64,000 nt of DNA from assembly GCF_000315625.1 (NCBI RefSeq), contig NW_005434561.1:1-64000 (forward strand), given 5' to 3'. This DNA comes from Guillardia theta CCMP2712 (taxonomy: Eukaryota; Protista; Cryptophyta). Below, in pieces: positions 1 to 52,854 of this stretch. Position numbers and translations under genes: made by a program. The notes beneath the pieces are model-generated. The model was not told where the DNA came from. It did no database searches and saw only the letters and a program-made list of their open reading frames with translations. Each line of letters opens with the position of its first letter. Position 1 is the stretch's first letter.

Positions 1-1817
1 CCTCCTCCTCTCACCGGCATGGCCGCACATCGTCAGCTGTTCCTCGCTTCCTTTGCATTTCACGTCATCCAACCAGATTCTTCCCGATCCTCCGCCGATA
101 GCTCGCACAGCCTATGCGCTGCATCAGCCTCCCTCCTCCTCCCTCCTCCTCCTCCGCCTCCTTCACCTCTGCTCTATGTGCAGGGTAACCCAGGGAGGAG
201 CAGACCACCCTCGCGTTCGTGTTGTCGAAACCATCATCGCAGACACTTCCCCAGTGACTGAACGATCCGTCAACCACAACCTTCTCCCTTCTCCTCTTCC
301 TCTGCTTACTTCTCGTGCAGCACCTCCAGTCTGCATGCTCGGTGATTGCACTGCGCGAGTCGGATGATTCCATTGTCACCTGCTCAGCCATCATCCTCTG
401 CTCCCGCCATCCCTCAATCTTCTTCTTCCTCTGCACCTCCTCCTTCCTCCTTTCCAACCTCATCCCTCCCTTGCTGCAGACCTTTCCCCCCTTCCCCCCG
501 GCTCTCCTCTCCCTGCTCACCGTCGGGGCACAGGTTGGGGTTGAACGAGGACAGCGCTGGCTGTCGGATGCTGTGAAGGTACGCGCCTGGCTCAGCCCCC
601 TGTCGACCCAGCTCTGCACGACCTTCAGGTTTCCTCCTCCTCCTCCTCCTCCTCCTCCTCCTCACCTCCTTTCTCTCCCGGGGGTCCGGCCGGGCCCTGA
701 GGTCCTCGAGGTCCATCCTCACCAGCTGGTCCAGCAGGACCGACGGCACCAGTGGGGCCACGCTCTCCTCTCACGCCTGCTGGGGGTCAGCAGGACAAGA
801 GCTGGGCTCGCTCCCTTCACCTTGCGCTCCCGGCGCCCCGACAGCTCCCAACATCCCGTTCCTTCCCGGAGCTCCAGGGGCCCCGGGGAGACCGGCTTGA
901 CCGGGCTCGCCTCGCTTCCCTTGGGGCCCCTGGGTCGCCCTCTGTTGGATCAGCTTGGTGAGCTTCGAGTCGATGCTGCTCGCTTCTTCCTCCACCGAGT
1001 TGGCGTTGGACGAGATGAACTCGCGCAACTTGTTCACTTTGTCCTGCATGACCTGGTCTGCTCCCTCCTGCTTCGTCAGCGCGTGCTTCAGCTTGTCCGC
1101 CATCTCCTTGGTTGCCTGTGCGTCGTCCCAGATCTCCTCAGGGACGGTGGGAGGCTGAGCAGGAGGTTCGACGTGGCTCTGGGTGAAGCGGATGGCTACC
1201 GCAGGGTTCACTTGCGTTATGCTGCTCGCTCCTGCCGTCTCTGGGATGTCGACGCTGCCCGACACGCGGATAGGTAGCTGTTGCATCCTCCCACGAACTC
1301 CCTGGAAGCTGCGGGGAGAAGAGAAGGGCTGAGGAGAGGAGCTGACAGCTGAGAGAGCCTGTATGCCCCGCTGCGCTTCCCTCCTCCCCCGCTCTTGACC
1401 TTGCCATGCCTGCTGGCTGTGGGCCCGGTGGAGCACAGGGCAGTGCGGACAGACCTTGACGACCTCCTGGTCTTGCTGGAGGACATCGGGCGATAATGGA
1501 CCGACGACTCCGAACTACACCGACTTAGAGGAGGGAAAGAGGCAGTGCGGGCGGGGGAGTGAAAGAGAAACAAAGAGGAGAGCCAAGAAGAGACGATGAA
1601 GGATCAATAAAGAGCGAAGGGAAAAGTCTGGGACGGCAGGAGGAATGACAAACTGTGAGGGACAAGGAGGGCTGCAGAGGAGGAAGAGCAGGCGCTACCT
1701 CAGAGAAGTCGAACGTGGCAAGTACAACGAGCACCTGGACATTGAATAGTGAAAAGGTTGCAAGGTCACCAACACCACAGTCCTCCAACACACTGAAACA
1801 CCGTAGGCCTGATGCAT
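1..1817 (-). CDS. Collagen-domain + SRCR-domain protein (class A scavenger-receptor-like architecture); multi-exon, 3' end beyond window
   Basis: Manual splicing: MHQAYGVSVCWRTVVL|VLVVLATFDFSE (hydrophobic N-terminus, ATG 1817); coiled coil (ORF 771-1436, KEMADKLKHALTKQ...KLTKLIQQ); 27 consecutive Gly-X-Y over three exons (GPQGKRGEP...GPPGEKGELGRQGAE); SRCR motifs IRLAQCNHRACRLEVLHE|HWGSVCDDGFDNTNARVVCSSLGY|IGGGSGRIWLDDVKCKGSEEQLTMC. Confidence 0.88.
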
Positions 1818-2243
1818 CTAAACCAGATCCTCAAGAAACCCCTTGAATAAACATCTCTATCCCTAATTGTGTTGACTACATTCAGCAACAACGTGGTCTC
1901 CCCAACACAGAAATGATACGTCATCTTCGTCATATCAAACAAGAGCTTGACTATTCTGCTCTTCTTTCATTCGTCATGCTCATCTCTTCGTCGCTCCTCT
2001 CACTTCTCTCACTCCTCTCGCTCCTCTTACCAGCATCATCATCGCCATCCCAATCCCGTGCGCCAGCCATCGTCCCTCCGCCATGTCCCTTCGCAAACCC
2101 ACCGTTTCGAACCGTTACATTTACCCTCATCCCCACGCAAACACCCGCTTGCTGGCCCGCATCCCCCGTCAATCCCATTTGAAGTTGAGTAAACCAAAAG
2201 CTTCGGCGCTGGCAATGCCCTCGCACATAGTTGAATCCTCTGC

Positions 2244-2400
2244 TGCCCTCCTGCTCTCCTGCTCTCGTGCTCTCCTGCCCTCCTGCTCTCCTGCTCTCCT
2301 GCTCTCCTGCTCTGCTGCTCTCCTGCTCCCCTTCTCACCTCCTCACCTCCTCTTTCTGCTCTCCTGCTCTCCTGCTCTCTTGCACTCCTGCTCTTCTTCG
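2244..2400. repeat. Degenerate (CTCCTGCT)n simple repeat
   Basis: Repeated ctcctgct units seen directly. Confidence 0.8.
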
Positions 2401-2766
2401 CCTTCATCCTCCTCCTCGTCGTTCTGCTCCCACCTCTTCTCTTCTCTTCTCCTCCTTTCGTCGCCACCCACGTCCTGTTTTCATTATCTCCTCTCATAGC
2501 CCTCACCAACCCTCTTCTCCTCTGCTTGATCGTTTGATCTAACTAGTATGAGAATTAGAATAGGGCTGAAATGAGCATCGAACATGGTCCAGAGCAGTTA
2601 CTGCAGCATGGTTTCATTGAGGATTGAGTTGACAAAGAGACTGAGGAGAGGCGTCGGAGAAGAGGAAGAGATAAGAGAAGAGCAGATGGTGACCGCAAGG
2701 TTTCGCAGGGCTCAGGCTGGTCCATCTGGTCTGCTGGTGCTCATCAAAAGCTGGTGCTCGTCTAGC

Positions 2767-3945
2767 ATGTTGAAGTGCAAGAGGCTCTGGCAGGCGAAGC
2801 GACTCGCGGGCTCGGCATGGAGTCGCAGCCTGCATGCCGCCAAGGCTGAAGCAGGAGACCTGTGGGTGTGGGGGCTCAACGACGATGCCGCTGAGTGTGC
2901 TCCTGCGCACGTGCAGGTCGGCAAGGTGAAGTCAGTGAGCTGCGGGCTCTTCCACTGGGCGGCGATCAGCGAGGAAGGAAAGCTCTTCACGTGCGGACGA
3001 GCTGATGCTGGACGACTGGGAAGGAGCTTAGAGGACGTCAAGATGACGCCAGCGTTCCGCAGCTACGCACAAGAAGCAGGAGAGGTTGATCTGCATGGGT
3101 TCGCTGCTGCTGTTGTCGCTGCCGGTGGCCTGCACTCGCTGGTGGTGCTGCAAGGAGGAGAGCTGCTGGCGTTCGGGTTCGGGGCGTGGGGTCAACTCGG
3201 GCTGGGGCACATCAGGGGGATGGAGAACTTGGACAACGCGATGACGCCCAAGTGGGTGAAGGGAGTGAAGGAGGTTCGTGAGGCGTCGGCTGGAGGAGCT
3301 CACTCGGCTGCCATCGATGGCGATGGGCGCCTGTACACGTGGGGCAGGAACGAAACTGGGAGGCTCGGCTACGTCAGCGACGCATTCATCCAGAACGTGC
3401 CGAAGGAGGTGGAGGTGGAGGGAGGCGAGAGGTTCAAACTGGTGACAGCATCCGCGTACCAGACCTTCGCTGTGTCCTCCAAGGACGAGCTGTGGAGTTG
3501 GGGCAGCGGATCCAACGGAGAGCTCGGTCTCGGGGAGAAGAAGACTGTCTTTACTCCCAACCGTGTCGTCGCGCTGGCAGGAGAGAGAGTCACGGCAGTC
3601 GCTGCTGGCGCCTTCCATGCTGCCGCTGCCACTGCCAACGGCGACATCCTCGTGTGGGGTGCAGGAGCTGACGGGCAGCTGGGCCTTGGGGAGGGCGTGA
3701 CCTCCGCGCTGGAACCGACGCGAGTCAGCGGGCTGCCGAGGATGCGGACGGTGGCGTGCGGGAGCATGCACACGGTCGCGGTGTCGGAGGACGGAGAGGT
3801 CTTCTGCTGGGGAGCTCAGAGAGGGGGACAGTCGGAGAAGGGAGACACTGAAGTCTACAGGGAGCCGCACGCGATGACGGCACTGCCGGGGCGGGTGAGG
3901 ACGGTCAGCGCGGGAGGAACCCGATCAGCGGCGATATTGGAGTGA
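2767..3945 (+). CDS. RCC1-repeat (beta-propeller) protein, intronless, possibly mitochondrial
   Basis: ORF 2584-3945 has repeated RCC1 motifs (AAGGLHSL..GELLAFGFGAWGQLGLG; AGGAHSAAIDGDGRLYTWGRNETGRLG; AAGAFHAAAATANGDILVWGAGADGQLGLG; ACGSMHTVAVSEDGEVFCWG). The likely start MLKCKRLWQAKRLAGSAWSRSLH at 2767 is basic and presequence-like. Confidence 0.9.
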   Translation: MLKCKRLWQAKRLAGSAWSRSLHAAKAEAGDLWVWGLNDDAAECAPAHVQVGKVKSVSCGLFHWAAISEEGKLFTCGRADAGRLGRSLEDVKMTPAFRSYAQEAGEVDLHGFAAAVVAAGGLHSLVVLQGGELLAFGFGAWGQLGLGHIRGMENLDNAMTPKWVKGVKEVREASAGGAHSAAIDGDGRLYTWGRNETGRLGYVSDAFIQNVPKEVEVEGGERFKLVTASAYQTFAVSSKDELWSWGSGSNGELGLGEKKTVFTPNRVVALAGERVTAVAAGAFHAAAATANGDILVWGAGADGQLGLGEGVTSALEPTRVSGLPRMRTVACGSMHTVAVSEDGEVFCWGAQRGGQSEKGDTEVYREPHAMTALPGRVRTVSAGGTRSAAILE

Positions 3946-4069: not shown

Positions 4070-7000
4070 TCAGTCGACTCTTTCAATCTTTCGCAATGTC
4101 TGATCGTCTTGTCTCCCCTGGCTGACGGCCTCGTGCTCCGCTGCTTTCCTATCAGTCCCATCCTGCTCCCCCCACCTCGCTCTCCTCCCCCCCCCCGCCT
4201 CCCCTCCCGCTCCTCCCCACTCTCACCGCTCTCTAACGCCTCCTTGTGCAGCTCCAGATCCTCCGAGGGGGCGTTGGGGTGCAACCGCAGCCACTCGAGC
4301 GTCTGCTGGGGGTCAGCTGGGGTCAGAGTTCGCGCCTCTCACCCGCTCGATCTGGTCCAGCAGGCGCTTCCTCGCTTCCCCCTGGCTCGACGACATGGAG
4401 GGGACGATGGAGGTCTTGAGCCAGTGCGCGAACCCCTCCACCTCCGTCCTCTCATCCACCAGCTTCGCCCTGGTCAGCTCGGCATGCAGCTCGGTGCGTG
4501 CTGACCTTGCGTCTTGCCTCGTCTTCCTCCTTGTGCGTCCGCGCGTCGAGGATGCTCCGCCGGACCTTCTGCTTGTCGTATCTCTCCTGCATGCTTATCA
4601 CACGCGCAGAGACAAGACGAGGAGGGGAGGAGAGGAAGGAGCTCGCCTTGTTGCTCGTGATGACCAGCTGCTGGTCCTTCTTGCCCGCCACTGCCCTGAC
4701 CTCGACGGTCCCGTCGGTCGCCATGCTGAAGAAGACGCTGACCTGCTGGCCCCGCGGGAGCAGGGGGATGCCATCAAGCAGCAGCCTCCCCAGCAGCTCG
4801 TTGTCGCGCGCAAAGAGACGCTCCCCCTCATAGACCTGCCGCGAGGAGATGAGGGAGGGAGGGAGGGAGGGAGGGAGGGAGGGAGGAGGTAAGGGAGGGA
4901 GGGAGGGAGGGAGGGAGGGAGGGTAGGAGGGACGGAGGAGGGAGAGGTTAGGGAGGGAGGGAGGGAGGGAGGGAGGGAGGGTTCTAGGACCTCTAGCAGG
5001 ATCGCCTCCTGGTAGTCGCTAACAGTATGTAACGTGAACTCCTTTCCTTCCACCGGCAGATCTTCTCCTCGATGAATCACTGCCGTCATCACCCCTACCC
5101 CACCCACTCACGTCAGGCCCTATGAACCCCTCCAGCCTCCTCTCCTCATGCTCTCACCTCCTGATGTCTCGATGCCCAGCGAGAGAGGAGCGACAGTCAG
5201 GCTAACCTCCACCTCCTTCATCACCCTCCTCCCGGAGATCACGTGCGCCTGTACCCACCCACCCACTCACTCACTCACTCCTCCTCCTCCTCTCTCCTCT
5301 TCTTTCTCCCCAACCACCACCAGCCCTCCTCCCCTTCTGCTTCTTCTCCTGCCTCCTCCCGCGACTCGCCTGGATGGCGGCGCCATGGGCGATGGCGTGA
5401 AGGGGGTCAACGTGCTTGAGGATCTCCTGGTCTTGGAAGTAGCTCTCGAGCAGAGCACGAAACTTGGGGATCTTGGAGCAGCCGCCGACCAGCACAACCT
5501 TGTTGACCTGCTGCTCCTTCACCTCCTCCATCTCTTCCCTTCCTCTCTTCTTTCTTCCTCCTGCTCCTGCCCCTGCCCCTGCCCCTGCCCCTGCTCCTGC
5601 TCCTGCTCCTCCTAATCTTCTCGTCCCCCGCCCTCCCTCGCACCTCCTCCTTGGTCATCTTGGCATTTCGCAGGATGCGGTCGAGGGGGTCGAGGGCGTT
5701 ACGGAAGAGGTCGGAGCAGAGAGACTCGAGTTGAGCGCGGGTGATGGAGAGGAAGAAGTCGACTCCCTCCGCCAGGTTGTCAACCTCTATCGTCGTCTGA
5801 TGCACCCCAGACAAGCTGATCTGTTTCCACCGTCACTCCTCCTCAACAATCTCCTTCCCGCCCCCTCCCTCGCTCTCCCCTCCCTCGCTCTCCCCTCCCT
5901 CGTCCTGGTCCTTGTTCTCGTCCTCCTCCTCACCTTCGCTTGCTCGCACTTGTAGCTTAACTTTCGTTGTGCTTCATCGAGTTTGCTGATGTCCTGCATG
6001 AGGCTCAGCTTCCAGCTGGTCGTCAGCTCGGGTCTACCTTCCCGTGCTTCCTCTTGAACTCTTCCGTGCAGAACTGCACCAGCCTGGCCACGTTCATCTT
6101 CTCAGCCCAGCTCACGTTCATTTTCTCAGCTCTTCCGAGGCACCTCACCTCTCGTCCAGCTGATCTCCGCCCAGGTTCATATCCCCAGCTGTCGCCTTGA
6201 TGTCAAAGATCCCATCCTCGACCGTCATGAGCGTCAGGTCGTAGGAGCTCGCCCCGAAGTCGCACACGAGCATCGCTCCTCTCCTCTCGCTCTCCAGCCC
6301 GTACGCCGTCGCTGCTGCCGTTGGCTCGTGGATGATTCGCAGCACGTTGAGGTCTGCCAAGATCGCCGCTCGCTCCACCGCCTGCACAAGCATCGGCTTA
6401 GACTCCCCATGCCCCCGCTGTTGCTGCTGCTCCTACTCCTCCACCACAACCTCGTTTCCATCTCCCTCCTCCATCACCTGTCGCTGCTCGCGATTGAAGT
6501 GCGGAGGGACCGCGACGACGGCGTGCGAGATGGTCTTGTTCAGCTGACGTTCAGCGTCTCGCTTGACTCGCTCCAGCAGGAGGCCCAGCAGCTGCTCGGG
6601 GAGCATCTCCACGGGCCCTCGCTCGCGCTCCATGACGTACCAGAGCTTGTTCTGCCGCAGGCTGGTGCTGCACAGGACTCGCTTCCTGTCCGACGTCAGG
6701 AACGGGTCGTCGGCTCGTCGCCCGAGGAAGCGCTTCATGTTGTACGCGACGCTCCCCAGGTTCGCGTGCGCCTCCTCCTTGGCGTGGCTGCCCACGACCA
6801 TGTCGCTGTGGCGCGCGAGGATCCAGGAGGGAGTGGAGGCGGACGAGAGCTCGTTGTAGATCATCTCGACCCGCCCCTCACTCCAGCTGCCAGCCTTGGT
6901 GTAGCCTCCTCCAATGTCAATGCCCAACACCTCGCCGCTGGTTTGCTGCTAGGACGTCAGGAGAGCAGAAGGTAGACGGGAAGAGGAGAGGAGGAGGAGA

Positions 7001-7195
7001 GGAGAAGGAAAGAGAAGGTGGAGGAGAGGGAGGAGAGACTTGGAGGAGGAAGGAAAGGGAAAGGAGACCTGGAGGAGGGAGGAGAGGATTTCAAGGGTGA
7101 AAGGAGACAGCAGGTCCTCCGCCACCTCCTTGACGATCTGCGAGGGCGTCTGACCCATGGCATCCTTGACAGCTGCAGCCTCCGGGAGGAGCTGA
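4070..7195 (-). CDS. Hsp70-family protein, divergent, multi-exon; 5' end lost in assembly gap
   Basis: Exons give [154 protein letters not shown]. Confidence 0.9.
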
Positions 7196-7224
7196 GAAGG
7201 TCAGGAGGATGAGGAGGAGGAGAG

Positions 7225-7781
7225 NNNNNNNNNNNNNNNNNNNNNNNNNNNNNNNNNNNNNNNNNNNNNNNNNNNNNNNNNNNNNNNNNNNNNNNNNNNN
7301 NNNNNNNNNNNNNNNNNNNNNNNNNNNNNNNNNNNNNNNNNNNNNNNNNNNNNNNNNNNNNNNNNNNNNNNNNNNNNNNNNNNNNNNNNNNNNNNNNNNN
7401 NNNNNNNNNNNNNNNNNNNNNNNNNNNNNNNNNNNNNNNNNNNNNNNNNNNNNNNNNNNNNNNNNNNNNNNNNNNNNNNNNNNNNNNNNNNNNNNNNNNN
7501 NNNNNNNNNNNNNNNNNNNNNNNNNNNNNNNNNNNNNNNNNNNNNNNNNNNNNNNNNNNNNNNNNNNNNNNNNNNNNNNNNNNNNNNNNNNNNNNNNNNN
7601 NNNNNNNNNNNNNNNNNNNNNNNNNNNNNNNNNNNNNNNNNNNNNNNNNNNNNNNNNNNNNNNNNNNNNNNNNNNNNNNNNNNNNNNNNNNNNNNNNNNN
7701 NNNNNNNNNNNNNNNNNNNNNNNNNNNNNNNNNNNNNNNNNNNNNNNNNNNNNNNNNNNNNNNNNNNNNNNNNNNNNNNNN
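7225..7781. other. Assembly gap (other gaps: 10183-10282, 18978-19564, 21406-21505, 23381-23480, 25625-25925, 27435-27534)
   Basis: Runs of N; each has simple repeats at or near at least one edge. Confidence 1.
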
Positions 7782-7813
7782 GCCTTTGTTAGTGTGTTGA
7801 CCCAAAGACACCC

Positions 7814-7831
7814 GGAGCAGGAGCAGGAGCT

Positions 7832-7869
<38 letters not shown>

Positions 7870-7992
7870 GGCAGGAGCAGGAGCAGGAGCAGGGGCAGGA
7901 GCATGGGCATGGGCATGAGCAGGGGCAGGGGCAGGGGCAGGGGCAGGAGCAGGAGCAGGAGCAGGGGCAGGGGCAGGAGCAGGAGCAGGAGC
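7814..7992. repeat. (GCAGGA/GCAGGG)n hexamer microsatellite
   Basis: Seen directly. Confidence 0.95.
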
Positions 7993-8118
7993 GGGGTAGG
8001 GGAGGGGAGGGGAGGGGAGGACGAGTCTGGTAGCTTCACCATGGTTTCGCATTTCCTTTCTTGCCGGCCCTACCTGGAGATTTTAGAGGCGGAGAATATG
8101 GGAGGAGGCTATGAGGGA

Positions 8119-17777: not shown

Positions 17778-18819
17778 ATGCAGAAGTTGAGCACGTTCTT
17801 CTCCACCTGTTTCCTTGTGATATTTCATTCCATCCACTTCTCCCATTTGAGTATCCTGCCAGGTCTCTTCTCAAAATTTTGCACATCGTGCCGCCCTTTC
17901 ATCAGATACAAGGAGGCACATCACGAGTTTGATGAGTTGCAGTGACCACTCGTAAGATCTCCCCGAGTTCGCTCTTGTTCATTGACCCTGCATCCTAGGA
18001 CCCATTGGTGCAGGACGCCGGCTGACCTCAGAGCTCTCTGCGCGTCGTACAAGCGCGTGCATCTCTTCCTCGGCAACGGGCCAAGGCTGCAGTACGAGGA
18101 TGTCGAGCAGGTCTGGCAGAACTTGACTCCCGTCCTCCGAGAACTCGACGAGGAGGCTGGGGGACCGCAACATTGGCTTGCGGTGTTCGGGGGCGACTCC
18201 GATGTCGGGTACGGAGACCCTGCAGGGTACGACATGGGGAGGGTGAGGGAGCAAGAGGGTGAAGCTAGCATGCTCAGCCATGGAGGCGCAGGTGATGGCA
18301 ATGCTGCGAGAGCGGAGGGGAACCAAGCTGCTGGCTGTGGTTGGGTGGGACGACGTTGATGCTCACGTGGACTTCGCATACAAGTGCTCGACGACAAACT
18401 GTTTCTGTATCATCTCAAGCCTACTCAGGTACAATATCGAGATCGATGAGGACGGGAAGGAGCTCTATGGAGGACTGCTCGGTTGCTGCCTTGTGCTCAC
18501 TCGTCCTCCTGACCTTGTGGTCTACAAGAATCCGGACGTGCGGTGGGAGGGACTGGGGTCTACCTGGGCGATGAATGGAGGAGGGAAGGATGGCCGTCCT
18601 CGGTAACTACAGCTCTCCCTCAGTTTGCATGCACTGATCTCGTTGGACTTCAGGTCATCGCAGTTGGAGCTGGAGGGCGGGTGGGCAAGGTTGAGATCGC
18701 CTACGCTGAAAGCAAGGTGCATGTGTTGCATGCGGGGGCATGGGGGGGCTCACTTCAGCTCGCTGCATCAGGGGATTCCTGTACGACGAGTGGAAGCCCA
18801 AGCTCGTTCGCGCTTCTGA
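17778..18819 (+). CDS. Hypothetical alpha/beta protein, possible SLOG (LOG/DprA-like) superfamily; multi-exon
   Basis: Spliced: YKRVHLFLGNGPRLQYEDVEQV...WLAVFGGDSD...GTKLLAVVGWDD...YGGLL..GRAVGGTGVYLG...VIAVGAGGRVGKVEIAYAESK|GIPVRRVEAQARSRF*. The C-terminal part resembles the LOG/SLOG hhhGGxGTxxEhxxAxxxgkPV signature. Start uncertain. Confidence 0.5.
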
Positions 18820-19748
18820 GCTGAAGCACAAGTGAGGAGGTGATCAGAGAAGAAATGACGGGGAGACACAGATGGGCTTTGTGGACCCTTCCCTCCTCCC
18901 TCCCCCCTCCTCCCTCCTCCCTCCTCCCTCCTCCCTCCTCCCTCCTCTCCCTTCCCTCCTCCCTCCTCCCTCGTATCNNNNNNNNNNNNNNNNNNNNNNN
19001 NNNNNNNNNNNNNNNNNNNNNNNNNNNNNNNNNNNNNNNNNNNNNNNNNNNNNNNNNNNNNNNNNNNNNNNNNNNNNNNNNNNNNNNNNNNNNNNNNNNN
19101 NNNNNNNNNNNNNNNNNNNNNNNNNNNNNNNNNNNNNNNNNNNNNNNNNNNNNNNNNNNNNNNNNNNNNNNNNNNNNNNNNNNNNNNNNNNNNNNNNNNN
19201 NNNNNNNNNNNNNNNNNNNNNNNNNNNNNNNNNNNNNNNNNNNNNNNNNNNNNNNNNNNNNNNNNNNNNNNNNNNNNNNNNNNNNNNNNNNNNNNNNNNN
19301 NNNNNNNNNNNNNNNNNNNNNNNNNNNNNNNNNNNNNNNNNNNNNNNNNNNNNNNNNNNNNNNNNNNNNNNNNNNNNNNNNNNNNNNNNNNNNNNNNNNN
19401 NNNNNNNNNNNNNNNNNNNNNNNNNNNNNNNNNNNNNNNNNNNNNNNNNNNNNNNNNNNNNNNNNNNNNNNNNNNNNNNNNNNNNNNNNNNNNNNNNNNN
19501 NNNNNNNNNNNNNNNNNNNNNNNNNNNNNNNNNNNNNNNNNNNNNNNNNNNNNNNNNNNNNNNNTTCCTCACTCCTCATGAGTATCGGCTTCATCACCAC
19601 TCGCTTGACTCTTTCTCTGCCCTCTCACACAAGCAAGTTCACCTCCTTGCTCTCCCCATTCACACCAGGAGAATTGTCATTCTGACTCCTGTGCTGTCTC
19701 GACTCATGTCTTACGTTCCCGCCGTCTTTCGCGCAGGATCTTGCTGGA

Positions 19749-20611
19749 ATGATTCGCTTTCATCTTGCCTCGACCATAGTCGTCGTGGTACCCTCAGAAG
19801 ACCTGCATTGTAGACATCCTGATTACAACACAGGGGTGCATCATTGCATATGTGTCAGGTGTTCCACTGCAGGATAGACAGTCATCATCGTCAGTAGCCA
19901 CTCAGCTCTCACAAGATTTCCTCACAGCAGGTCCATCCATGCTGATGGTTGTTGTGGCTCTGATTGATTCTGTCGATTAGAAGTACACTTGCATCGAAAG
20001 CATGCGCGCCATTCATTGGAGGGAAAGAACAAGACACACTACGAGGATCCTTACACGACTGTGATTGGTTTGAGACTGGGTTCAACCCTGATCTGACTCT
20101 TGTTCACAGTCTTGCCAAAGTGGCGAGGTAAACATTACCATCGTAGGTGAGTAACAACCTCTTGGCTCTGCTCACGCCTTCGCTTCTTTCGCTCCTACGC
20201 AGCTTTCACGCGTGATACTTTTTCTCGCAGGGATCGCAGGAGCCATCTGCTCTCCAACCTGCTCGGTATCCTCTCCAAGAGACCGTCACCTTCTGACAGG
20301 GCTCTGTCCAGGTCATGGACTCTTGTCCCAAGGACAAACCCCCAACCGTGACAGCCAAGGCTCAATGTGCACTTCAGGTTTCGAGATGGTGGGGAGAGCA
20401 GCAGTGGGCTGACCGATGCGATGCGCTTGTTCAGGACATGTCGGGCAGAAAGTTTTGTGCCCTCATCTGTAATCCGCCCGATGAGAAGGTTTGGTTCCTC
20501 CCTCTCGCTGACTCGTCTGACGCTGACAAGGGCAACGATGACGGGGAGTGCGGGGAGAACGCCTCTTGCAAGGCCATCAGCGGAGTTGGCATTTGCACCT
20601 ACGACCAGTGA
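19749..20611 (+). CDS. Small, probably secreted, 10-cysteine protein, multi-exon
   Basis: Spliced: MIRFHLASTIVVV...KTHYEDPYTT|SCQSGEVNITIV|GIAGAICSPTCS|VMDSCPKDKPPTVTAKAQCALQ|DMSGRKFCALICNPPDEK|GNDDGECGENASCKAISGVGICTYDQ*. Confidence 0.75.
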
Positions 20612-29860: not shown

Positions 29861-30103
<243 letters not shown>

Positions 30104-30151
30104 TGAAAGATAGACACCATTTTATAAAGGCTATGGAGCGCTGCCTCGTAA

Positions 30152-30225
30152 GCTTCCGTAGCTCAGTCGGTCAGAGCGAACGGCTGTTAACCGTTAGGTC
30201 GCAGGTTCGAGCCCTGCCGGGAGCG
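30152..30225 (+). tRNA. trnN-GTT: tRNA-Asn (GTT)
   Basis: Acceptor GCTTCCG/CGGGAGC, D-arm GCTC..GAGC, anticodon arm AACGG-CT GTT AA-CCGTT, T-arm GCAGG-TTCGAGC-CCTGC, discriminator G, no encoded CCA. Confidence 0.97.
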
Positions 30226-30232
30226 CGAATCC

Positions 30233-30237
30233 TTTTT
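30233..30237 (+). terminator. RNA Pol III oligo-T terminator of tRNA-Asn
   Basis: TTTTT starting 8 nt after the tRNA 3' end; a TATA-like TTTATAAA lies about 30 nt upstream of the tRNA (30121-30128). Confidence 0.7.
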
Positions 30238-30286
30238 GCGCTCAGCCGCTCAACTTTTATATTCCAAGTGGATGACGCGCGCCATA

Positions 30287-31482
30287 TCAGAGACTATCAG
30301 AGGACCTGTTAGAGCAGTGCCATTTCGTTCCAACACCGCTGTGGAAGAATGTTTGTCCTGCAGCCCTCAATATTTTTACCTTTTATTTTGGTTTTCCCAT
30401 TGCTTTTTCTTTTCTAAGTAAGATAACCTCAAGACTCCTGCTTCTTCTTCAAACTTTTTTCGTTCTTCACTGTCAAGTGCTCTCCATTTCTCTCCTATTT
30501 TTCGTCCCATCTCTAAAAACTCAATGCCAGGGTTCTCATCTTTCACAGACTGCCTGATCTTATTTGAAAACAGCACGAAAGGACTGCAAGGAAGTCTTGG
30601 AGCTTCCTGCAAAGATACTTCAAAATCCTATTTGAATCAAGACATTGAATTACTAGGGGTCGTTTTTTCTTTTTCTTCTTTCTCGAAAGAGGACCTGGAA
30701 AGCATAAATATCATGACGCCAGGCACGAACATCAAACCTTGGTCTAAGTCTGTGAGATGGCTGGCTCCTTGCACGTCCTGCTGATTATCATGGGGCTTTA
30801 ATTCTTGACCCTGCGTTTCCTTTTCTTGATTCACGATTGAATTTTGAGCTAAAAGCGAATTTTCAGCTGCACTTGCAGCTGTCATGTCACGAACAGCGGT
30901 TTGTCCATCAGCTGTTTGTGAGAAGCGTTTCCCTGACAAATGGCTGTACTCCGGTAGGTCTACTGCCATTGCAGCAGAATCATAAGGATTTTGGGGGGGC
31001 AAAACCAAGTCATCATATCTTTTTGGAGTTTGTTGCTGATTGGAAGATGTCGAGCCTTCATTGCGTTTTGCTAGACCAAAACCAGCTTTCTCTTGTTCAG
31101 CCTTGTAGTCGAAATTCATCAAAGCCTTCAACAAAGCATCTGGTGATACAGCTCGTGCACTTCCCATTCTGTAATCTTTTAGGTGCACATCATGACCTTG
31201 CAGACCTTTCTCGTCGTTGGCTGTGTCTTCGTCGTCATGCTCCATTTTGGTGATAGAAGCAAGCATAGTGCTTTGGTCATCGTCGTAACAGGTTGGAGAA
31301 TAGCTATCACCATCGGAGCACTCATTATCGACTCCCTGTGAGATACAAGTCGAACAAGGTTTTAGCAAGTCGCATTCGACTCCATTCGCTTTACAACGAC
31401 TGCAAGCTAACCCGGTGAAACTTTGATAGTTTTGCAGATCATGTATTTTTGATCTCTGCTTCTGACTGCCACTGTCAGTCAT
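30287..31482 (-). CDS. Transcription factor with N-terminal Zn(II)2Cys6 cluster and C-terminal HMG box
   Basis: CSRCKANGVECDLLKPCSTCISQGVDNEC = Cx2Cx6Cx5Cx2Cx8C (31318-31404). HMG box: APRLPCSPFVLFSNKIRQSVKDENPGIEFLEMGRKIGEKWRALDSEERKKFEEEA (ORF 30376-30612). The two parts would be joined by short introns. Confidence 0.85.
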
Positions 31483-32299
31483 GAATCCACTCGCAGATAT
31501 GAAAGAATATTTTCATGGAATCAATCATCTACATTCTATGCGTGAAGGGCAAAGCCATTCAGGTTTCGATCTCTGATTTAGCGTCCGAATGCCAGTACAA
31601 TTTGATTTTCGATGCGCAGTGAACTGGAATTCTTGAAATACTTTGGCTACCTGCTGTTTTGTCTCGTCACATGTTGAATTGAATAAAGAAGACTGGGGTG
31701 ATGATATTTCCTGTCATTTCTTCCTTCGCTTGCTCATCGGCATTGACCCGACGACCTCCATGGAGCTACGGCGCCTGAGGGCGTGGAGGACGGGGGGGAG
31801 GCGGGGAAAGTGAAGCGTACTAGATAAATTAAAATGATAGTCACGGAAATATCAGTACTACTTGAGAACTGGTACTTCACTTAGTACCAGAATAGCGAGA
31901 TTGCTGCGACTTTTTGTACGGGGTTTTCGATGCTCCTTGATCGCTAAAATAGTTGTTGCAAAGCCCCTGACCACCCCCCAGTTTTGACGAGCAACTGGTA
32001 GGATGTGACGATGGGGCAGGGGTGGTGGGGAGGGACGCCAGTCAAACGTGGAAAGGACCTACTCTTCTGTACATCCCTGGGGCGAGCGAATGGAGAGGAG
32101 GAACAGAGATGCGCCATGGAGCCTGACGATGATATGAAGAGGAAGAGTTGAACTGAAGGAGAAAACACAATGAGCAGCATTGCAGGAGCCATGTCGACTT
32201 GTACTCTCACTGAATACGACACCAGGAGCGACTGCGATCAACTTTGCGTGTGCTCAAAACAAGAAGGGTCTTAAATTCTCAAACTCGGGCAAAGGATCA

Positions 32300-34110
32300 A
32301 CCGTTTGTGAATTCTTTATTTACAAAGCAATCTGACCATCGTTACATCTTGGCTCAAGTCTTAAAGGAACGTCGAGGAACTATGTGTAAAAGTCTTCCTA
32401 AATGGTTCCAGCTTGAATATTCCATAAGTCAAAAGCACATACCAAGCTCACCTCGCTATCTTCAGAGACAGTAAGTAGCGCGAGAGACTCTTTGTTATCG
32501 TTGGCCTTGGTATACGTCGAGAAAACCGTACTTCCACACCTAATTTCGCACATGCATATGTCAGAACATGAATGACTTTGAATTGACCTTCTTGAACGTA
32601 CCTCCAACAGTAGTTTGCACCAGGCAGATGCTTTTTCTCGAAGCATCTTGGGCATTTATACGTACCTACAAAAACCTCACAACTTCTCTTGCAAATCAGC
32701 AGAACATCTCACTCTTTTCTCCATCCAAATTTGCTTTCTGCAATGCAATCGCAAGTTTTGTGAGCTGATAGGGAATGATAGTTGCACCGACCAATATCCC
32801 ACCAGCCACCACTGCTCTTCCAGCAGGAGTTTGCGGCGTGATATCTCCAAAACCAACCTGTTGATTCCTGTTGGTTGGATCGTATGTACAGTATCATGTC
32901 ACTGACCGTTGTCAAAGTGGTGACTGCAAAGTAAAAGGACGTGAAGAAATTCTCTCTGAAACAGCATTAGGCTGAAGATGGTGACGAAATGCGAGATACA
33001 AAGCAGGGTTGTATGGTGCCTGTGAATACCTTGCAGTCAAAACCAAATGTCTCAGATGGATTTCAGATGGTCTGACCTCAACAGAGTAGAACATTCCGGT
33101 TGCAATGAAAAGTGTTGTCCAAACGGTGCTTCCGACGCGAAGAAACTGCAGACTTTCGTTTCCGGATCGTCACAGTGAAATGATGTATTTTCACCTCGAG
33201 CTGATAGGGTTGAATCTCAAAGTTCTTCGGCAAAAACGGCTGATACAGCCTCTTAAAGCTCCTGTCGTCCTTGAGATACCTGTTGCCCTTGCAAGTCAAT
33301 CAAGGGAAGCCTGATGTCCTCCCGTTGCCTCTGAAGTCGCAGAACGCGCAGAAGACGCAAAAACGTGAACCCAGTGAAATTTCCCAATCCTAAGGCGCGC
33401 AGGGTGTACGGAACGAATGAGATGAAATCGACAACCATCTCCCATTTCAGCAGATATCTGTGGTGATGTTGATGGAGATGACAATATCTTTGCTGACTAA
33501 CCTCAGCTTGAAGTTTCTTGAATACCATCTCAGTACGTATTCGGTAATGAAAAGTTTGTTCACCACATCCTCTACCTGGCCGCACCATGTCACAAAGCAC
33601 GTGGTACTCATGGCAATGAACTAGCCTGATTCAACCGTATTCGCGATTGATAGTCTAGTGACACAGTTTGCTCTGCCAGAACGAAACATCCCACAAGTAC
33701 CTGAGCTCGACCCATTCAGTAATGCATATCATGTGATAGAGACCATGACCGTGAACGCAATGAAAATCTCAGTGGCCGGAAGTCTCAAAAACCGGTTTAC
33801 ACTCCGTGCTAATGGCAACGATGGTTTCGAACGCCTTTCTCTGAATTTTTGTCTTTGCATTGAAAGCCCTTCGACACTTGAGACTGAAGACAAATCAACT
33901 CTTCCTCTCCCTCCTTGCCTTGCTTTGAACTCACTTGGTCTGCTCCGACATGTGTGCGACATGGCTCTGTCTTGTCGAACCTAGTGCATGGTAACCTTCA
34001 TAGCACCGCACACAGGACGGTTCAACCTCAAACCAACTTCTGTGAAATGCAGTACTTTGTGAGAGGATATGTCCTGCAGCCAGCCCACGGGGGCATAGAG
34101 CAAATGCCAT
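32300..34110 (-). CDS. Voltage-gated-type (6TM) potassium channel, multi-exon
   Basis: S3/S4 VVDFISFVPY..FTFLRLLRVLRLQR; S5 STVWTTLFIATGMFYSVE; pore FFTSFYFAVTTLTT|VGFGDITPQTPAGR; S6 GILVGATIIPYQLTKL. Ends approximate. Confidence 0.88.
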
Positions 34111-47800: not shown

Positions 47801-48078
47801 AGTGAAGTGAAGCCAAGAGGAGAAGCGCGTGTGCAGAGGAGGAGGAGGAGGAGGAGGAGGAGGAGGAGAAGGAGAAAAGGCCAAGGGGAGTGGAGGAAGG
47901 AGGAGGAGATAAGGAGGATGAGTAGAAGGAGCAGGAGCAGGAGATAAGGAGGATGAGTAGCAGGAGCAGGAGCAGGAGATAGGGAGGAGGAGTAGCGGGA
48001 GGAGGAGGATCAGGAGGAGGCATGATCATGATTCGCATCATTCATTCGGCAACGCTGTCGACCAGAATTCCCAATCAC

Positions 48079-51000: not shown

Positions 51001-51265
51001 GATCATTCCGTATTTCTGATAGAGTTGATCTGCATAATTATTCGGTGCCTTCTGCGTACACATCGCATAGCAGTTCCTAAATCCATCAAATTACAACTAG
51101 CCCAGCCTGCAAGCTTATGAAAACTCACGTGTATAGCTCAGAATGCAGGGAAAGCGCAAATGGTTCTCTAAAACCGCCTTCCATGATCTCGATAAACTTG
51201 TCAAATCCTTCCTGCATTTTGCCCCATCCTTGTTCCAGCGTGATATAGTCTTGAGACTGCATCAT
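48079..51265 (-). CDS. CUL1: Cullin-1, multi-exon
   Basis: [13 protein letters not shown]; [18 protein letters not shown]; [23 protein letters not shown]; LFSYLSDK|[16 protein letters not shown]; GMLTDM; [12 protein letters not shown]; [11 protein letters not shown]; neddylation region [25 protein letters not shown]...[16 protein letters not shown]. Confidence 0.95.
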
Positions 51266-52854
51266 GCAGGGGAGATAGCACGGCAAGCGATTCAGACTAA
51301 GCCTGCTGAGACGCTGCTCCTGCTCCACAGACGAGTATGAAGCCTTAGGGCCTGGCTTGGATCGCAATCCTGAGCAACAGGAATGAGATACACAAATATG
51401 CAGCTGCAATTATCAAGCAGAAGGCATGGATACTTCAACAGACTGAATGAAACTGATATTTTACAACAGCCCTGATTTCAAACAAAACTATTTGGACCAC
51501 AAATTGCCACTTTCATCATTGAGTAGATCATCTTAAGGAAAAAGAAACTTGTGATTAGGACTTCAAACTACTATAACAAATGTTGTACACGGATCGATCG
51601 AGCAAAACAATGGAAGTGAGTACTTGAGGTCTTCGGACATGTGCAAGGGATCTGAATCGGATGTGGGCAATCGAGCGTACAGTACAACAGATAGAGACAG
51701 GAGACAGAGACAATAATACAAAGAACAAGTTAAAATGACTCAGGAGAGGGTAGCAATGTCAAGCAACTGCGGAAGGGACCGAGACCAGAGGGATGGACAA
51801 AGAATGAAGCAAGAATGAAGAGGAAAAACGAAAGGGAGATGACGATGATAAGGAAGGAGAGAGAAATCAGCAGAAGAAGGAGAGCTAGAGTAGGTTGATG
51901 AGCAGTAGGATCAAGAGAAGAAGGGGAGGGAGGAGTAAGCAGATGCTGGAGCCGTGTCGCCGCTTTCTGGCCTAGCAGCAGGGAGCATTGCGGCAGAGGG
52001 TCTGAGCTGTCCTATCGTGCGATCTCGGGAAACTTGGCTTCCTGAGGGTAGGGTCATGACACAAGAAAACTCGAAATTTATTGGTAATATTCTATATTGA
52101 ACTTCTCAATTATGTTTAATTTTACGGAAATATTTTCAATGGCCGGTACTTCCATCGCCAACTTCCGAAGGAATTGGTTCGAATTAGTCGGGTATAAAGT
52201 AAGGGGTGGGGCTTCTTGAAATATAGGGTAGGGTGCAGTACCCACCCCTGGAATCCCGAGGCATTACAAAAATTCCTACCTTGGAGTGGGTAGTAATTTA
52301 TCAGGTTCTAGCAATGCTATACCAGGGAGGATATGCCTAGGAGGATACGACAGGGTGGGCGGGATAGAGGGGGTGGGGACATGCGAGGTTCCAGAGGAGT
52401 GAAGTACCGGTACTTATGTGACTAGACTCACTCAGTGATATGAACCCTACTGCCGGGCAGTGGCCCCGGGCCGATCGGGCCCGCCGGGATCCGAGTCTGG
52501 GCCCGGCCACCGTCACAGTCACGGACTCGCACGGACGCCGCCGGCCCGGCCACCGACTCTCGGGAACTTGTGACTTCGGAACGGCCTGAGTCCGAAGTTC
52601 CTCTAAGAGAACAGGCTCGTCATCTTGCCGCTGCTCACAGTGACTGGCAGTGGCCCTCGGGTAGCCGCGGCTGTGAGTCCGATCCGATGATGGACTGTCG
52701 GATCGGACGGTCCCGGCGTGGACCGACCGGCCAGGTGCCGGTGTGACTTCGGAACCGTCCAGCAGCAAGTGCCCATGCCAGAAAGTGTAACGTCGATTTC
52801 TACTGAGAAGCTCAACTGGCAAAGTGCCATCGGACTCCCGTTTTGATTGTGGCA

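What the first reader, a model, noticed from the sequence alone, without database searches (positions are those of the whole stretch)
1..1817. Class A scavenger-receptor architecture (hydrophobic N-terminus, coiled coil, 27 Gly-X-Y collagen, SRCR) in an apparent algal/protist genome
Seen: splicing across small GT-AG introns gives an uninterrupted 27-triplet collagen stretch, preceded by a coiled coil and followed by an SRCR domain (CRLEVLH..WGSVCDDGFD...VVCSSLGY...GSGRIWLDDVKC). Known: this domain order is that of vertebrate MSR1/SCARA5/MARCO, trimeric receptors that bind bacteria and polyanions; SRCR and collagen domains each occur separately in protists. The SRCR also has an unusual extra Cys pair (IRLAQCNHRAC) where animal domains have IRLVGG...G. 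Inference: a convergently assembled trimeric pattern-recognition or prey-capture molecule. This is the best candidate for an undescribed system here.
Basis: partly seen in the sequence, partly recalled or inferred. Interest (0 to 1): 0.8.

Follow-up and report, generated by a model that had tools for sequence, protein, structure and literature searches.

The report
Collagen-stalked SRCR surface protein of cryptophyte
The alga Guillardia theta expresses a gene whose protein has the domain order of vertebrate class A scavenger receptors (hydrophobic anchor, helical coil, 27 collagen triplets, SRCR head), probably assembled independently; its function is untested, and the scan has already found several such genes in this genome.

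Summary
On the minus strand at window 15-2084 lies one expressed gene of Guillardia theta CCMP2712. It is the public model GUITHDRAFT_165796, annotated 'hypothetical protein, partial', at the very end of scaffold JH993077.1.

- **Splicing:** Transcript contigs from two runs carry all the predicted GT-AG splices in a single RNA.
- **Domains:** The product has a hydrophobic N-terminus, a conserved CPHC motif, a family-specific module, a roughly 70-residue helical coil, exactly 27 uninterrupted Gly-X-Y triplets and an SRCR domain. On the public spliced model Pfam scores SRCR at 63.7 bits and Collagen at 51.4 bits.
- **Corrections:** The last exon lies off the scaffold. The public model removes the conserved CPHC stretch through two mini-introns that the transcripts do not show.
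- **Relatives:** Relatives (Hanusia phi and unlabelled environmental sequences) keep the same layout, the same 27 triplets and a clade-specific extra Cys-x4-Cys in the SRCR.
- **Relation to vertebrate receptors:** Outside the collagen and SRCR parts nothing resembles them, so this is a look-alike architecture, not a family member.
- **Status:** Function is untested. No paper found describes it. The scan had already noted this architecture in several other genes of this genome.

The parts
2031..2093 (-). Exon 1: 5' UTR plus the start codon at 2084. It encodes the first 18 residues (MAEGRW...), which begin the hydrophobic segment. Stop codons lie in frame upstream.
   Evidence: X2 transcript contig piece 2029-2093 joined to 1732; frame and upstream stops; same N-terminus in public model P0294
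1735..2030 (-). Intron 1 (GT..AG, 296 nt). It is spliced out in the X2 contig and retained in the X1 contig.
1699..1734 (-). Exon 2 (12 codons): the rest of the hydrophobic segment. Residues 6-26 as a whole give Kyte-Doolittle about 2.1 over 19 residues.
1515..1698 (-). Intron 2 (184 nt, GT..AG).
   Evidence: joint 1514/1699 in the X1 and X2 contigs
821..1514 (-). Exon 3 (694 nt, uninterrupted in transcripts). In order it encodes: the juxtamembrane CPHC motif (1440-1451), a variable Ser/Arg/Gln-rich spacer, the conserved QQLPIRV...VAIRFTQSHVE module, the helical coiled-coil region (930-1145) and the first 12 Gly-X-Y triplets (from 929).
   Evidence: contig pieces 820-1514 with no joint; conservation in P0001, P0004, P0005 and P0123; heptad count; helix 194-265 in the AlphaFold model of relative P0123; Pfam Collagen 25.7 bits
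666..776 (-). Exon 4: 37 collagen residues, phase 1 at both ends. Introns 777-820 and 614-665 flank it; the second is a GAG-rich repeat.
   Evidence: Pfam Collagen 28.7 bits
521..613 (-). Exon 5: the last collagen triplets (the collagen ends at 591) and the conserved linker ...SSFNPNLCPD with one Cys.
310..379 (-). Exon 6: start of the SRCR domain (DNGIIRL...) with the clade-specific extra C-x4-C (CNHRAC). Intron 380-520 lies upstream.
167..257 (-). Exon 7: SRCR core (HWGSVCDD...VVCSSLGY). It has no Cys after LG, as in group A SRCR domains.
   Evidence: Pfam SRCR 32.1 bits, profile positions 18-43; joint 257/310 also in raw RNA reads
15..111 (-). Exon 8: SRCR (GSGRIWLDDVKCKGSEEQLTMCGHA).
   Evidence: Pfam SRCR 24.3 bits, profile positions 57-81; contig pieces 14-115
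1..14 (-). First bases of the last intron, then the end of scaffold JH993077.1. The final exon (rest of the SRCR, stop codon, 3' UTR; about 400 nt of transcript) is not in the window.
   Evidence: loose ends at position 14 in X1, X2 and X19; locus L004 maps the gene to record positions 16-2084

Best explanation
Shown: this is gene GUITHDRAFT_165796 of the cryptophyte alga Guillardia theta. It has at least nine exons, is expressed, and encodes about 440 residues.

From N- to C-terminus the protein has:
- nine N-terminal residues and a hydrophobic segment of about 21 residues;
- a conserved CPHC motif;
- a variable spacer;
- a conserved module of about 45 residues found only in this family;
- a helical coil of about 70 residues;
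- exactly 27 Gly-X-Y triplets;
- a short linker with one Cys;
- one C-terminal SRCR domain.

Inferred mechanism:
- The hydrophobic segment acts as an uncleaved signal anchor (type II, N-terminus inside).
- The coil brings three chains into register and nucleates a collagen triple helix.
- The CPHC and linker cysteines staple the trimer.
- Three SRCR heads are held roughly 35 nm from the membrane: 81 collagen residues at 0.286 nm plus about 72 helical residues at 0.15 nm.
- The heads bind ligands through the cation-holding acidic cluster that is functionally important in animal SRCR domains. All of its positions are kept here.

The molecule therefore most likely works like a class A scavenger receptor or defence collagen, as a multivalent cell-surface binder of anionic or microbial surfaces. 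By descent it belongs to a cryptophyte family that combined these domains on its own. The ligand and the biological role are unknown.
For: Gene and expression:
- One transcript carries all exons.
- Runs from six studies hold the stretch, at word shares of 0.5-0.6. These fit exon-only content, but none is on record as RNA.
- Identity with XP_005823184.1 on scaffold JH993077.1.

Domains:
- Pfam SRCR 63.7 bits and Collagen 51.4 bits on the public spliced model.
- Among solved single-domain SRCR structures, the best sequence matches are MARCO (69.2 bits) and SCARA5 (69.0 bits).

Anchor:
- Kyte-Doolittle 2.1 over 19 residues after a short Arg-containing N-terminus.
- Hydrophobic stretches of about 14 to 27 residues at the N-terminus of relatives P0004, P0005 and P0123.

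Coil:
- Best heptad register has 10-12 of 21 a/d positions hydrophobic.
- AlphaFold predicts helix for residues 194-265 of relative P0123.
- Weak Pfam coiled-coil hits.

Selection on the layout:
- The Hanusia phi orthologue is 76% identical. Two further lineages are 36-44% identical.
- All keep CP[HE]C, the QQLPYRV/VAIRF module, the coil, the linker Cys and the C-x4-C.
- All five full collagen regions have exactly 27 triplets.
- The three relatives whose C-terminus was read (P0123, L008, L009) end in GICCRRF.

Binding site:
- Counting from the first Asp of VCDD, the residues that hold cations in DMBT1 SRCR8 fall on D, D, E, D, D and D in the Guillardia sequence. The DMBT1 residues are D1019, D1020 and E1086 (site 2) and D1058, D1059 and N1081 (site 3), from PMC7043408.
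- All offsets agree once a loop one residue shorter is allowed for (sequence).

Independent assembly:
- No similarity to MARCO or a Xenopus class A protein outside the collagen and SRCR parts.
- No PF03523 hit.
Against: - No predictor for signal peptide versus anchor was available. A cleavage after VLA (residue 24) cannot be excluded, which would make the protein secreted.
- The heptad pattern is only moderate.
- Trimerisation, hydroxylation and triple-helix stability are untested.
- The collagen part counts about as many basic as acidic residues (by hand from the composition), so it lacks the basic cluster through which SR-A binds polyanions.
- The P0123/P0005 lineage has lost several of the acidic cation-site residues, so that site may not be the family's common function.
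- The last 15 or so residues of the Guillardia protein were not seen.
- Guillardia theta is grown as a phototroph. I have no evidence that it captures prey.
Confidence: 0.6

Rival explanations
1. Secreted or surface-coat structural protein. The hydrophobic N-terminus is a cleaved signal peptide, and the trimeric collagen-SRCR molecule is exported to form or anchor part of the cell covering outside the plasma membrane (the surface periplast layer or glycocalyx). It would not act as a receptor.
For: - A small-residue motif (V-L-A) ends the hydrophobic stretch.
- The core hydrophobic stretch of relative P0123 is only about 14 residues, which is signal-peptide-like.
- The strictly conserved length of 27 triplets suits a spacer or structural ruler.
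- The Guillardia plasma membrane is described as having a knobbly surface. The same paper's reference list cites work whose title says that the surface periplast of another cryptophyte self-assembles from a secreted polypeptide (PMC6212826).
Against: - The hydrophobic stretches in this protein, P0005 and P0004 are 20-27 residues long, more like membrane anchors.
- The cation-binding cluster of ligand-binding SRCR domains is kept.
- Nothing links this protein to the periplast.
Confidence: 0.25
2. Descent or horizontal transfer from an animal class A scavenger receptor. A collagen-SRCR cassette, or a whole receptor gene, came from an animal and then diversified in cryptophytes.
For: - The best single-domain solved matches are MARCO and SCARA5 (69 bits, against 40-58 bits for the others).
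- The language-model look-alikes of relative P0123 are all chordate MARCO/MSR1 clusters (scores 0.80-0.85, leads only).
- The SRCR is of the group A type (LGY, no Cys there), as in MARCO, and the single BLAST alignment covering collagen and SRCR is about 40% identical.
Against: - The N-terminal 225 residues show no similarity, and there is no PF03523 hit.
- Mollusc DMBT1-like SRCR domains score as high or higher (80-84 bits) than carp MARCO (79.7 bits), so there is no special affinity to class A.
- The collagen-SRCR junction differs: a conserved 27-residue Cys-containing linker here, against about 8 residues in MARCO.
- The SRCR carries a clade-specific C-x4-C.
- The family has at least three lineages at 36-44% identity, and one intron position (after HRAE) is shared by Guillardia and the L008/L009 lineage.
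Confidence: 0.08
3. Artefact: a gene model that merges two genes, a contaminant scaffold, or a pseudogene.
For: - The public model is partial and wrongly spliced in exon 3.
- The gene is cut by a scaffold end.
- One transcript contig retains intron 1.
Against: - Single transcript contigs span all exons in two runs filed under different organism labels.
- The frame is open throughout.
- Hanusia phi has an orthologue at 76% identity.
- Full-length relatives occur in independent assemblies.
- The neighbouring genes are ordinary Guillardia models.
Confidence: 0.02

Closest known systems
Vertebrate class A scavenger receptors with an SRCR head (MSR1/SR-AI, SCARA5; MARCO lacks the coil)
   Same: - The domain order is the same: short N-terminal tail, hydrophobic anchor, spacer, alpha-helical coil, collagenous Gly-X-Y region, one C-terminal group-A-type SRCR.
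- The SRCR is 40-50% identical to that of fish MARCO by eye in the BLAST alignment.
- The acidic cation-site residues are kept.
   Different: - There is no detectable homology in the N-terminal half and no PF03523 hit.
- The cytoplasmic tail is only about 9 residues.
- The CPHC motif and the QQLPYRV/VAIRF module have no animal counterpart.
- A 27-residue Cys-containing linker sits between the collagen and the SRCR.
- The SRCR has an extra C-x4-C, and the three relatives read to their C-terminus end in an extra Cys (...GICCRRF).
- The collagen part is not basic.
- The host is a unicellular alga. Whelan et al. 2012 (PMC3567963) found this architecture in vertebrates only.
Collectins and other defence collagens (SP-A, SP-D, MBL, CL-P1/COLEC12)
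   Same: Trimeric collagen stalk plus coiled coil presenting three recognition heads; cysteines near the N-terminus that could cross-link chains.
   Different: - In collectins the coil follows the collagen and the head is a C-type lectin. Here the coil precedes the collagen and the head is an SRCR.
- Most collectins are secreted.
Other collagen-stalked genes of Guillardia theta noted by this scan (heads: SRCR plus crystallin plus PA14, C-type lectin, FN2)
   Same: According to the scan's notes (not checked here), these share the anchor, coiled coil and collagen stalk with animal-type binding domains, in the same genome. One tested link: the SRCR subtype with C-x4-C also occurs in a PA14+SRCR protein cluster (P0208).
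   Different: This gene is the minimal form, with a single SRCR head and nothing after it. Whether the N-terminal modules are shared with those paralogues was not tested.
Collagen-like fibre proteins of polinton-like viruses, virophages and giant viruses (also reported in cryptophyte genomes, PMC12220804)
   Same: Collagen triplets in a trimeric fibre used for attachment.
   Different: - A scan of viral contigs gave only two matches, confined to the coil/collagen part (residues 203-349 and 290-346 of P0123), with none to the N-terminal modules or the SRCR.
- This gene has eight or more introns, host-like composition and cellular neighbours.

Membership tests
Vertebrate class A scavenger receptors (MSR1, MARCO, SCARA5) | N-terminal uncleaved signal anchor (type II membrane topology) | tested here: inconclusive
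   A hydrophobic segment of about 21 residues follows a 9-residue N-terminus containing Arg (Kyte-Doolittle 2.1). Relatives have stretches of about 14 to 27 residues. No signal-peptide or TM predictor was available to exclude cleavage.
Vertebrate class A scavenger receptors (MSR1, MARCO, SCARA5) | Alpha-helical coiled coil N-terminal to the collagenous domain (MSR1, SCARA5) | tested here: met
   A 72-residue region directly before the first Gly-X-Y. The best heptad register has 10-12 of 21 a/d positions hydrophobic. AlphaFold predicts helix for the aligned region of P0123, pLDDT 55-70. Weak Pfam coiled-coil hits. The oligomeric state was not tested.
Vertebrate class A scavenger receptors (MSR1, MARCO, SCARA5) | Collagenous Gly-X-Y domain | tested here: met
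   27 uninterrupted triplets across three exons, joined in transcripts. PF01391 scores 51.4 bits against a cutoff of 27.2.
Vertebrate class A scavenger receptors (MSR1, MARCO, SCARA5) | Single C-terminal group A SRCR domain | tested here: met
   PF00530 scores 63.7 bits. MARCO and SCARA5 are the best single-domain solved matches. The LGY motif has no group B Cys there. The three relatives read to their C-terminus end 5 residues after the last SRCR Cys. The Guillardia C-terminus itself is off the scaffold.
Vertebrate class A scavenger receptors (MSR1, MARCO, SCARA5) | Sequence homology of the non-collagen N-terminal half (Pfam PF03523 Macscav_rec; common descent of the five vertebrate members) | tested here: not met
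   No PF03523 hit at E up to 0.1. BLASTP against Megalops MARCO and a Xenopus class A protein aligns only the coil/collagen and SRCR parts.
Vertebrate class A scavenger receptors (MSR1, MARCO, SCARA5) | Binding of modified LDL, polyanions or bacteria | not testable with these tools
   This needs binding assays. Only the conservation of the SRCR acidic cation-site residues could be shown.
SRCR superfamily (PF00530) | SRCR domain with the conserved Cys framework and WG.VCDD / G.I.LDDV.C motifs | tested here: met
   The last two Cys are seen partly in the transcript loose end (GWGRADCGHW) and fully in relatives.
Cryptophyte collagen-stalk SRCR family (defined here from the relatives found) | CP[HE]C after the anchor; the QQLP[YI]R...VAIRF module; the DAQAT coil start; 27 Gly-X-Y triplets; the linker ...SF.P..CP..DNG; C-x4-C in the SRCR | tested here: met
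   All are present in the window's protein and in P0005, P0123, L008 and L009. The truncated P0001 and P0004 carry them as far as they reach.

The most novel reading that the evidence does not exclude
Cryptophyte algae evolved their own repertoire of 'defence collagens'. These would be membrane-anchored trimeric collagen stalks that present interchangeable animal-type recognition heads: SRCR here, and C-type lectin, FN2 and PA14 in paralogues according to the scan's notes. The cell would use them to recognise bacteria, viruses or partner cells at its surface. This would be a unicellular parallel to vertebrate class A scavenger receptors and collectins, an architecture that the literature holds to be vertebrate-specific.
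Probability: 0.25. Interest if true: 0.8.

Novelty: new variant of a known kind. Interest (0 to 1): 0.55.

Why it matters
The only systematic study I found (PMC3567963) reports no class A scavenger-receptor architecture outside vertebrates and concludes that it arose after vertebrates diverged. Here the same order of parts is encoded by one expressed gene in a unicellular alga. It is kept, down to the number of collagen triplets, in relatives only 36-44% identical.

If the protein is a surface trimer that binds microbes, two things follow:
- 'Collagen stalk plus three recognition heads' would be a solution that evolution found at least twice.
- Cryptophytes would offer a simple cell in which to ask what such receptors do without an immune system.

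The work also corrects a public gene model: the exon 3 splicing is wrong, the conserved CPHC motif is missing, and the last exon lies off the scaffold.

The weight of this single finding is limited, because the scan has already reported the same architecture in several other genes of this genome.

Tried and rejected
- **Start at ATG 1286 (MQQLP...).** Rejected. The frame stays open upstream to 1514. That upstream part is conserved in all relatives. The Hanusia orthologue has Thr where this Met stands.
Rejected. It lies in intron 1 and is out of frame with the collagen exon after splicing.
- **Word-based homologue searches**. They found few relatives and were flooded by unrelated collagens. No full-length Guillardia product is in that collection in the length ranges searched (136-432 and 179-569 aa), so the C-terminus could not be recovered.
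- **The one exhaustive representative search**, run with the linker plus SRCR of P0123. The best 150 are almost all multi-SRCR proteins ranked by summed domain scores; the ten I looked up are mostly molluscan DMBT1-like proteins. It says nothing about how far the collagen+SRCR architecture is distributed. Only one of those hits has a collagen run.
- **AlphaFold on relative P0123** with a 5-sequence alignment. Mean pLDDT was 41, which is usable only for the helix call and not for a fold search. The second fold job was not used, because the sequence evidence for the SRCR is already strong and model coordinates are not returned, so the C-x4-C geometry could not be checked.
- **Viral contigs.** Only two matches, confined to the coil/collagen part.
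- **Metagenome contigs.** Two further full-length relatives, no taxonomy.
- **P0208 cluster (PA14+SRCR).** The members are fragments, with no collagen or N-terminal modules visible.
- **Plastid or periplastid targeting through a bipartite leader.** Considered and set aside. The sequence after the hydrophobic stretch starts acidic (DFSEF...), and a collagen-SRCR ectodomain fits the secretory surface route better. Not tested.
Full report
**What is in the sequence**

The feature lies on the minus strand. Hand-splicing at GT..AG sites gives exons 1514-821, 776-666, 613-521, 379-310, 257-167 and 111-15. These form a single open frame. In it, 27 Gly-X-Y triplets run without interruption across three exons and are followed by an SRCR-type sequence.

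Pfam recognises the single exons:
- Collagen: 28.7 bits for exon 4 and 25.7 bits for the end of exon 3.
- SRCR: 32.1 bits for exon 7 (profile positions 18-43) and 24.3 bits for exon 8 (positions 57-81).

No other collagen or SRCR coding stretch exists in the 64-kb window.

**Transcript evidence**

Fifteen runs from six studies hold the stretch. Their word shares of about 0.5-0.6 fit exon-only content, but none of these holders is on record as RNA.

Laying four runs on 1-2600 gave one contig of 1920 nt (X1, depth 804) and one of 1777 nt (X2, depth 88). Each carries all the exons above in a single record.
- Joints 257/310, 375/517 (cut +4), 775/820 and 1514/1699 have CT..AC ends on the plus strand, that is GT..AG on the minus strand.
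- The joints at 115/171 and 615/675 follow from adjoining record positions across repeats that the tool skipped.
- Raw RNA reads (X19) cover the 3' exons, and two of them cross 257/310.
- A low-depth run (X12) shows pieces that run through introns, as genomic DNA would.

The collagen and SRCR exons therefore belong to one mRNA. The refutation by 'different genes' fails.

**The 5' end**

Exon 3 runs unbroken from 1514 to 821 in both contigs. Upstream lie intron 2 (1515-1698), exon 2 (1734-1699), intron 1 (1735-2030; spliced in X2, retained in X1) and exon 1 (to at least 2093).

The first in-frame ATG after upstream stops is at 2084. From there the frame runs without a stop into the collagen exons.

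The N-terminus is MAEGRW followed by a hydrophobic stretch of about 21 residues (Kyte-Doolittle 2.1 over 19 residues). The ATG at 1817 is in intron 1 and is out of frame after splicing.

**Identity**

A cluster look-up gave NCBI protein XP_005823184.1 / EKX36204.1, 'hypothetical protein GUITHDRAFT_165796, partial [Guillardia theta CCMP2712]' (P0294). It maps to positions 16-2084 of scaffold JH993077.1 of GCA_000315625.1. These are exactly the window coordinates, so window position 1 is the end of the scaffold.

This explains why the model is partial. Transcript loose ends at position 14 continue the SRCR as GWGRADCGHW, and about 400 nt of transcript lie beyond the window.

The public model has the same N-terminus. 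It also removes 43 residues of exon 3 through two mini-introns that the transcript contigs do not show. The removed part holds the conserved CPHC motif.

On this public spliced protein Pfam gives SRCR 63.7 bits (E 2e-17) and Collagen 51.4 bits (E 9e-14). It gives no PF03523 (Macscav_rec) hit. The scaffold is algal, not animal. The neighbouring gene is an RCC1-repeat model of Guillardia.

**Relatives**

| Relative | Identity to the window's protein | Source |
|---|---|---|
| P0001, Hanusia phi (EukProt) | 76% | labelled cryptophyte |
| P0004 lineage, with contigs L008 and L009 | about 40-44% | environmental assemblies, unlabelled |
| P0005 / P0123 lineage | 36-38% | Logan, ENA and JGI assemblies, unlabelled; P0123 is full length at 482 aa |

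All share these features:
- a hydrophobic N-terminus;
- CP[HE]C about 20 residues behind it;
- a variable spacer;
- the module QQLP[YI]R..G....P......NP.VAIRF.QSH;
- a coil starting at ..DA[QK]AT;
- the collagen region;
- the linker ...SF.P..CP..DNG;
- an SRCR that carries C-x4-C before the first conserved strand.

The three relatives whose C-terminus was read (P0123, L008, L009) end in GICCRRF followed by a stop.

Every complete collagen region (Guillardia, P0005, P0123, L008, L009) has exactly 27 triplets. The intron after ...HRAE is shared by Guillardia and L008/L009. The intron after ...H[AS]G is shared with the P0005 contig.

Conservation of layout and stalk length at this sequence distance argues for a functional, selected protein. 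Only Hanusia is labelled taxonomically. That the other lineages are cryptophytes is an inference.

**The SRCR domain**

Against solved structures, the Guillardia SRCR matches:

| Solved SRCR structure | Bits |
|---|---|
| MARCO | 69.2 |
| SCARA5 | 69.0 and 67.2 |
| LOXL2 | 57.9 |
| MSR1 | 56.7 |
| neurotrypsin | 56.5 |
| DMBT1 | 55.4 |
| M2BP | 55.2 |
| single CD163 domains | about 40 |

It lacks the Cys after LG (LGY), as group A domains do.

Within the proteins fetched here, per-domain scores to the Guillardia SRCR fall into three bands:
- 101-112 bits for the family and for a PA14+SRCR cluster (P0208);
- 80-84 bits for DMBT1-like proteins, six of the nine looked up being from molluscs;
- 79.7 bits for carp MARCO.

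There is thus no special affinity to class A receptors.

The C-x4-C occurs 19 times among 899 SRCR anchor motifs. Eighteen of these are in this family and the P0208 cluster.

For the binding site I used the residue numbers given for DMBT1 SRCR8. Site 2 is D1019, D1020 and E1086. Site 3 is D1020, D1058, D1059 and N1081 (PMC7043408). Counting offsets from the first Asp of VCDD, the Guillardia sequence has D, D, E and D, D, D at those places, with a loop one residue shorter. L008 and L009 keep them too. The P0123 lineage has lost several. That paper shows that mutating D1019 or D1020 abolishes cation-dependent ligand binding. It reports the motif as conserved in MARCO, SR-A1 and others.

**Comparison with class A receptors**

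BLASTP of the public model against Megalops MARCO and a Xenopus class A-type protein aligns only the coil/collagen part and the SRCR, at 39-41% identity. Nothing in the first 140 or so residues aligns.

The language-model atlas lists only chordate MARCO/MSR1/SRCR+collagen clusters as look-alikes of P0123. Scores are 0.80-0.85, which the tool rates as leads only. This fits the absence of any large non-animal cluster with this layout in that resource.

Whelan et al. 2012 found no class A scavenger receptor in non-vertebrate genomes. They concluded that the architecture arose in vertebrates (PMC3567963).

Full-text searches gave no paper on such a protein. The term combinations were cryptophyte or Guillardia with collagen, SRCR or scavenger receptor. 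A paper on polinton-like viruses of cryptophytes describes collagen repeats in viral fibre proteins (PMC12220804). However, a scan of viral contigs with the family alignment gave only two matches, both confined to the coil/collagen part.

**How it most likely works**

Shown: one expressed gene; the domain order; conservation.

Inferred:
- The hydrophobic segment is a signal anchor with the short N-terminus inside.
- The coil registers three chains and nucleates the triple helix.
- CPHC near the membrane, and perhaps the linker and C-terminal extra cysteines, form stabilising disulfides.
- The stalk (about 23 nm of collagen plus about 11 nm of coil) presents three SRCR heads.
- The heads bind ligands through bound cations.

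By hand count, the collagen part has about as many basic as acidic residues (composition). Binding through a basic collagen cluster, as in SR-A, is therefore unlikely.

The main rival is a cleaved, secreted molecule that forms part of the surface coat. Descent from an animal receptor is unlikely. An artefact is excluded.

**Novelty and weight**

This is a look-alike of a known kind of receptor, in a lineage and with N-terminal modules that have not been described. The gene itself is public but unannotated.

The scan's own notes list 28 entries on collagen plus SRCR in this genome. They include followed-up genes with the same anchor-coil-collagen-SRCR order, some with crystallin, PA14, C-type lectin or FN2 heads. 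I did not check those genes. They make this a further, minimal member of a set the scan already knows, not a first sighting.

Noticed in passing
window 1286-1470 (exon 3), compared with P0294: The public model XP_005823184.1 splices out two mini-introns inside exon 3 (reading ...EVVK / PAGMA / SFQG...). This deletes 43 residues, including the conserved VCPHCPV motif. The transcript contigs are uninterrupted there.
   Followed up: yes
window 1735-2030: Intron 1 is retained in the 1920-nt contig of run X1 and spliced out in the contig of run X2. With the intron retained, the ORF from ATG 2084 stops after about 34 residues, so part of the mRNA pool may be unproductive. This could also be an assembly path choice.
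   Followed up: partly
window 2230-2400: A CT-rich hexamer-like repeat (CTCCTG/CTCTCC units) lies upstream of the gene. It attracts many unrelated contigs (depth jumps to 494-2031 in the 2263-2349 bin, with many loose ends). Similar GAG/CTC repeats fill introns 4 and 7 (624-674, 125-170).
   Followed up: no
window 2584-3945 (+): A 453-aa open frame with RCC1 repeats. The public Guillardia model there (314 aa, window about 2872-3813) has Pfam RCC1/WD40_RLD hits. An ordinary neighbour gene on the opposite strand.
   Followed up: partly
window 6001-8000, 18001-20000, 30001-34000, 48001-52000: Islands of 40-46% G+C in a window that is otherwise 52-63% G+C. They could be intergenic or repeat DNA, or inserted elements. 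Not examined.
   Followed up: no
If real, it would be a second animal-type adhesion or recognition gene within 10 kb of this one.
   Followed up: no
L005:308-1762 (IMGVR_UViG_3300042892_004659, 175-kb viral contig): A large viral contig encodes a product that matches residues 203-349 of P0123 (coil end plus collagen) at 44% identity in the best segment. It has no match to the family's N-terminal modules or SRCR.
   Followed up: no
L002:1409-2857 (ENA contig k141_1289623, 10.9 kb): The 482-aa relative P0123 is encoded as one uninterrupted ORF on a 10.9-kb contig that also carries a Cse1-type exportin gene. Guillardia and L008/L009 have introns in the same gene. Either that lineage is intron-poor or the contig comes from a transcript-based assembly.
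   Followed up: no
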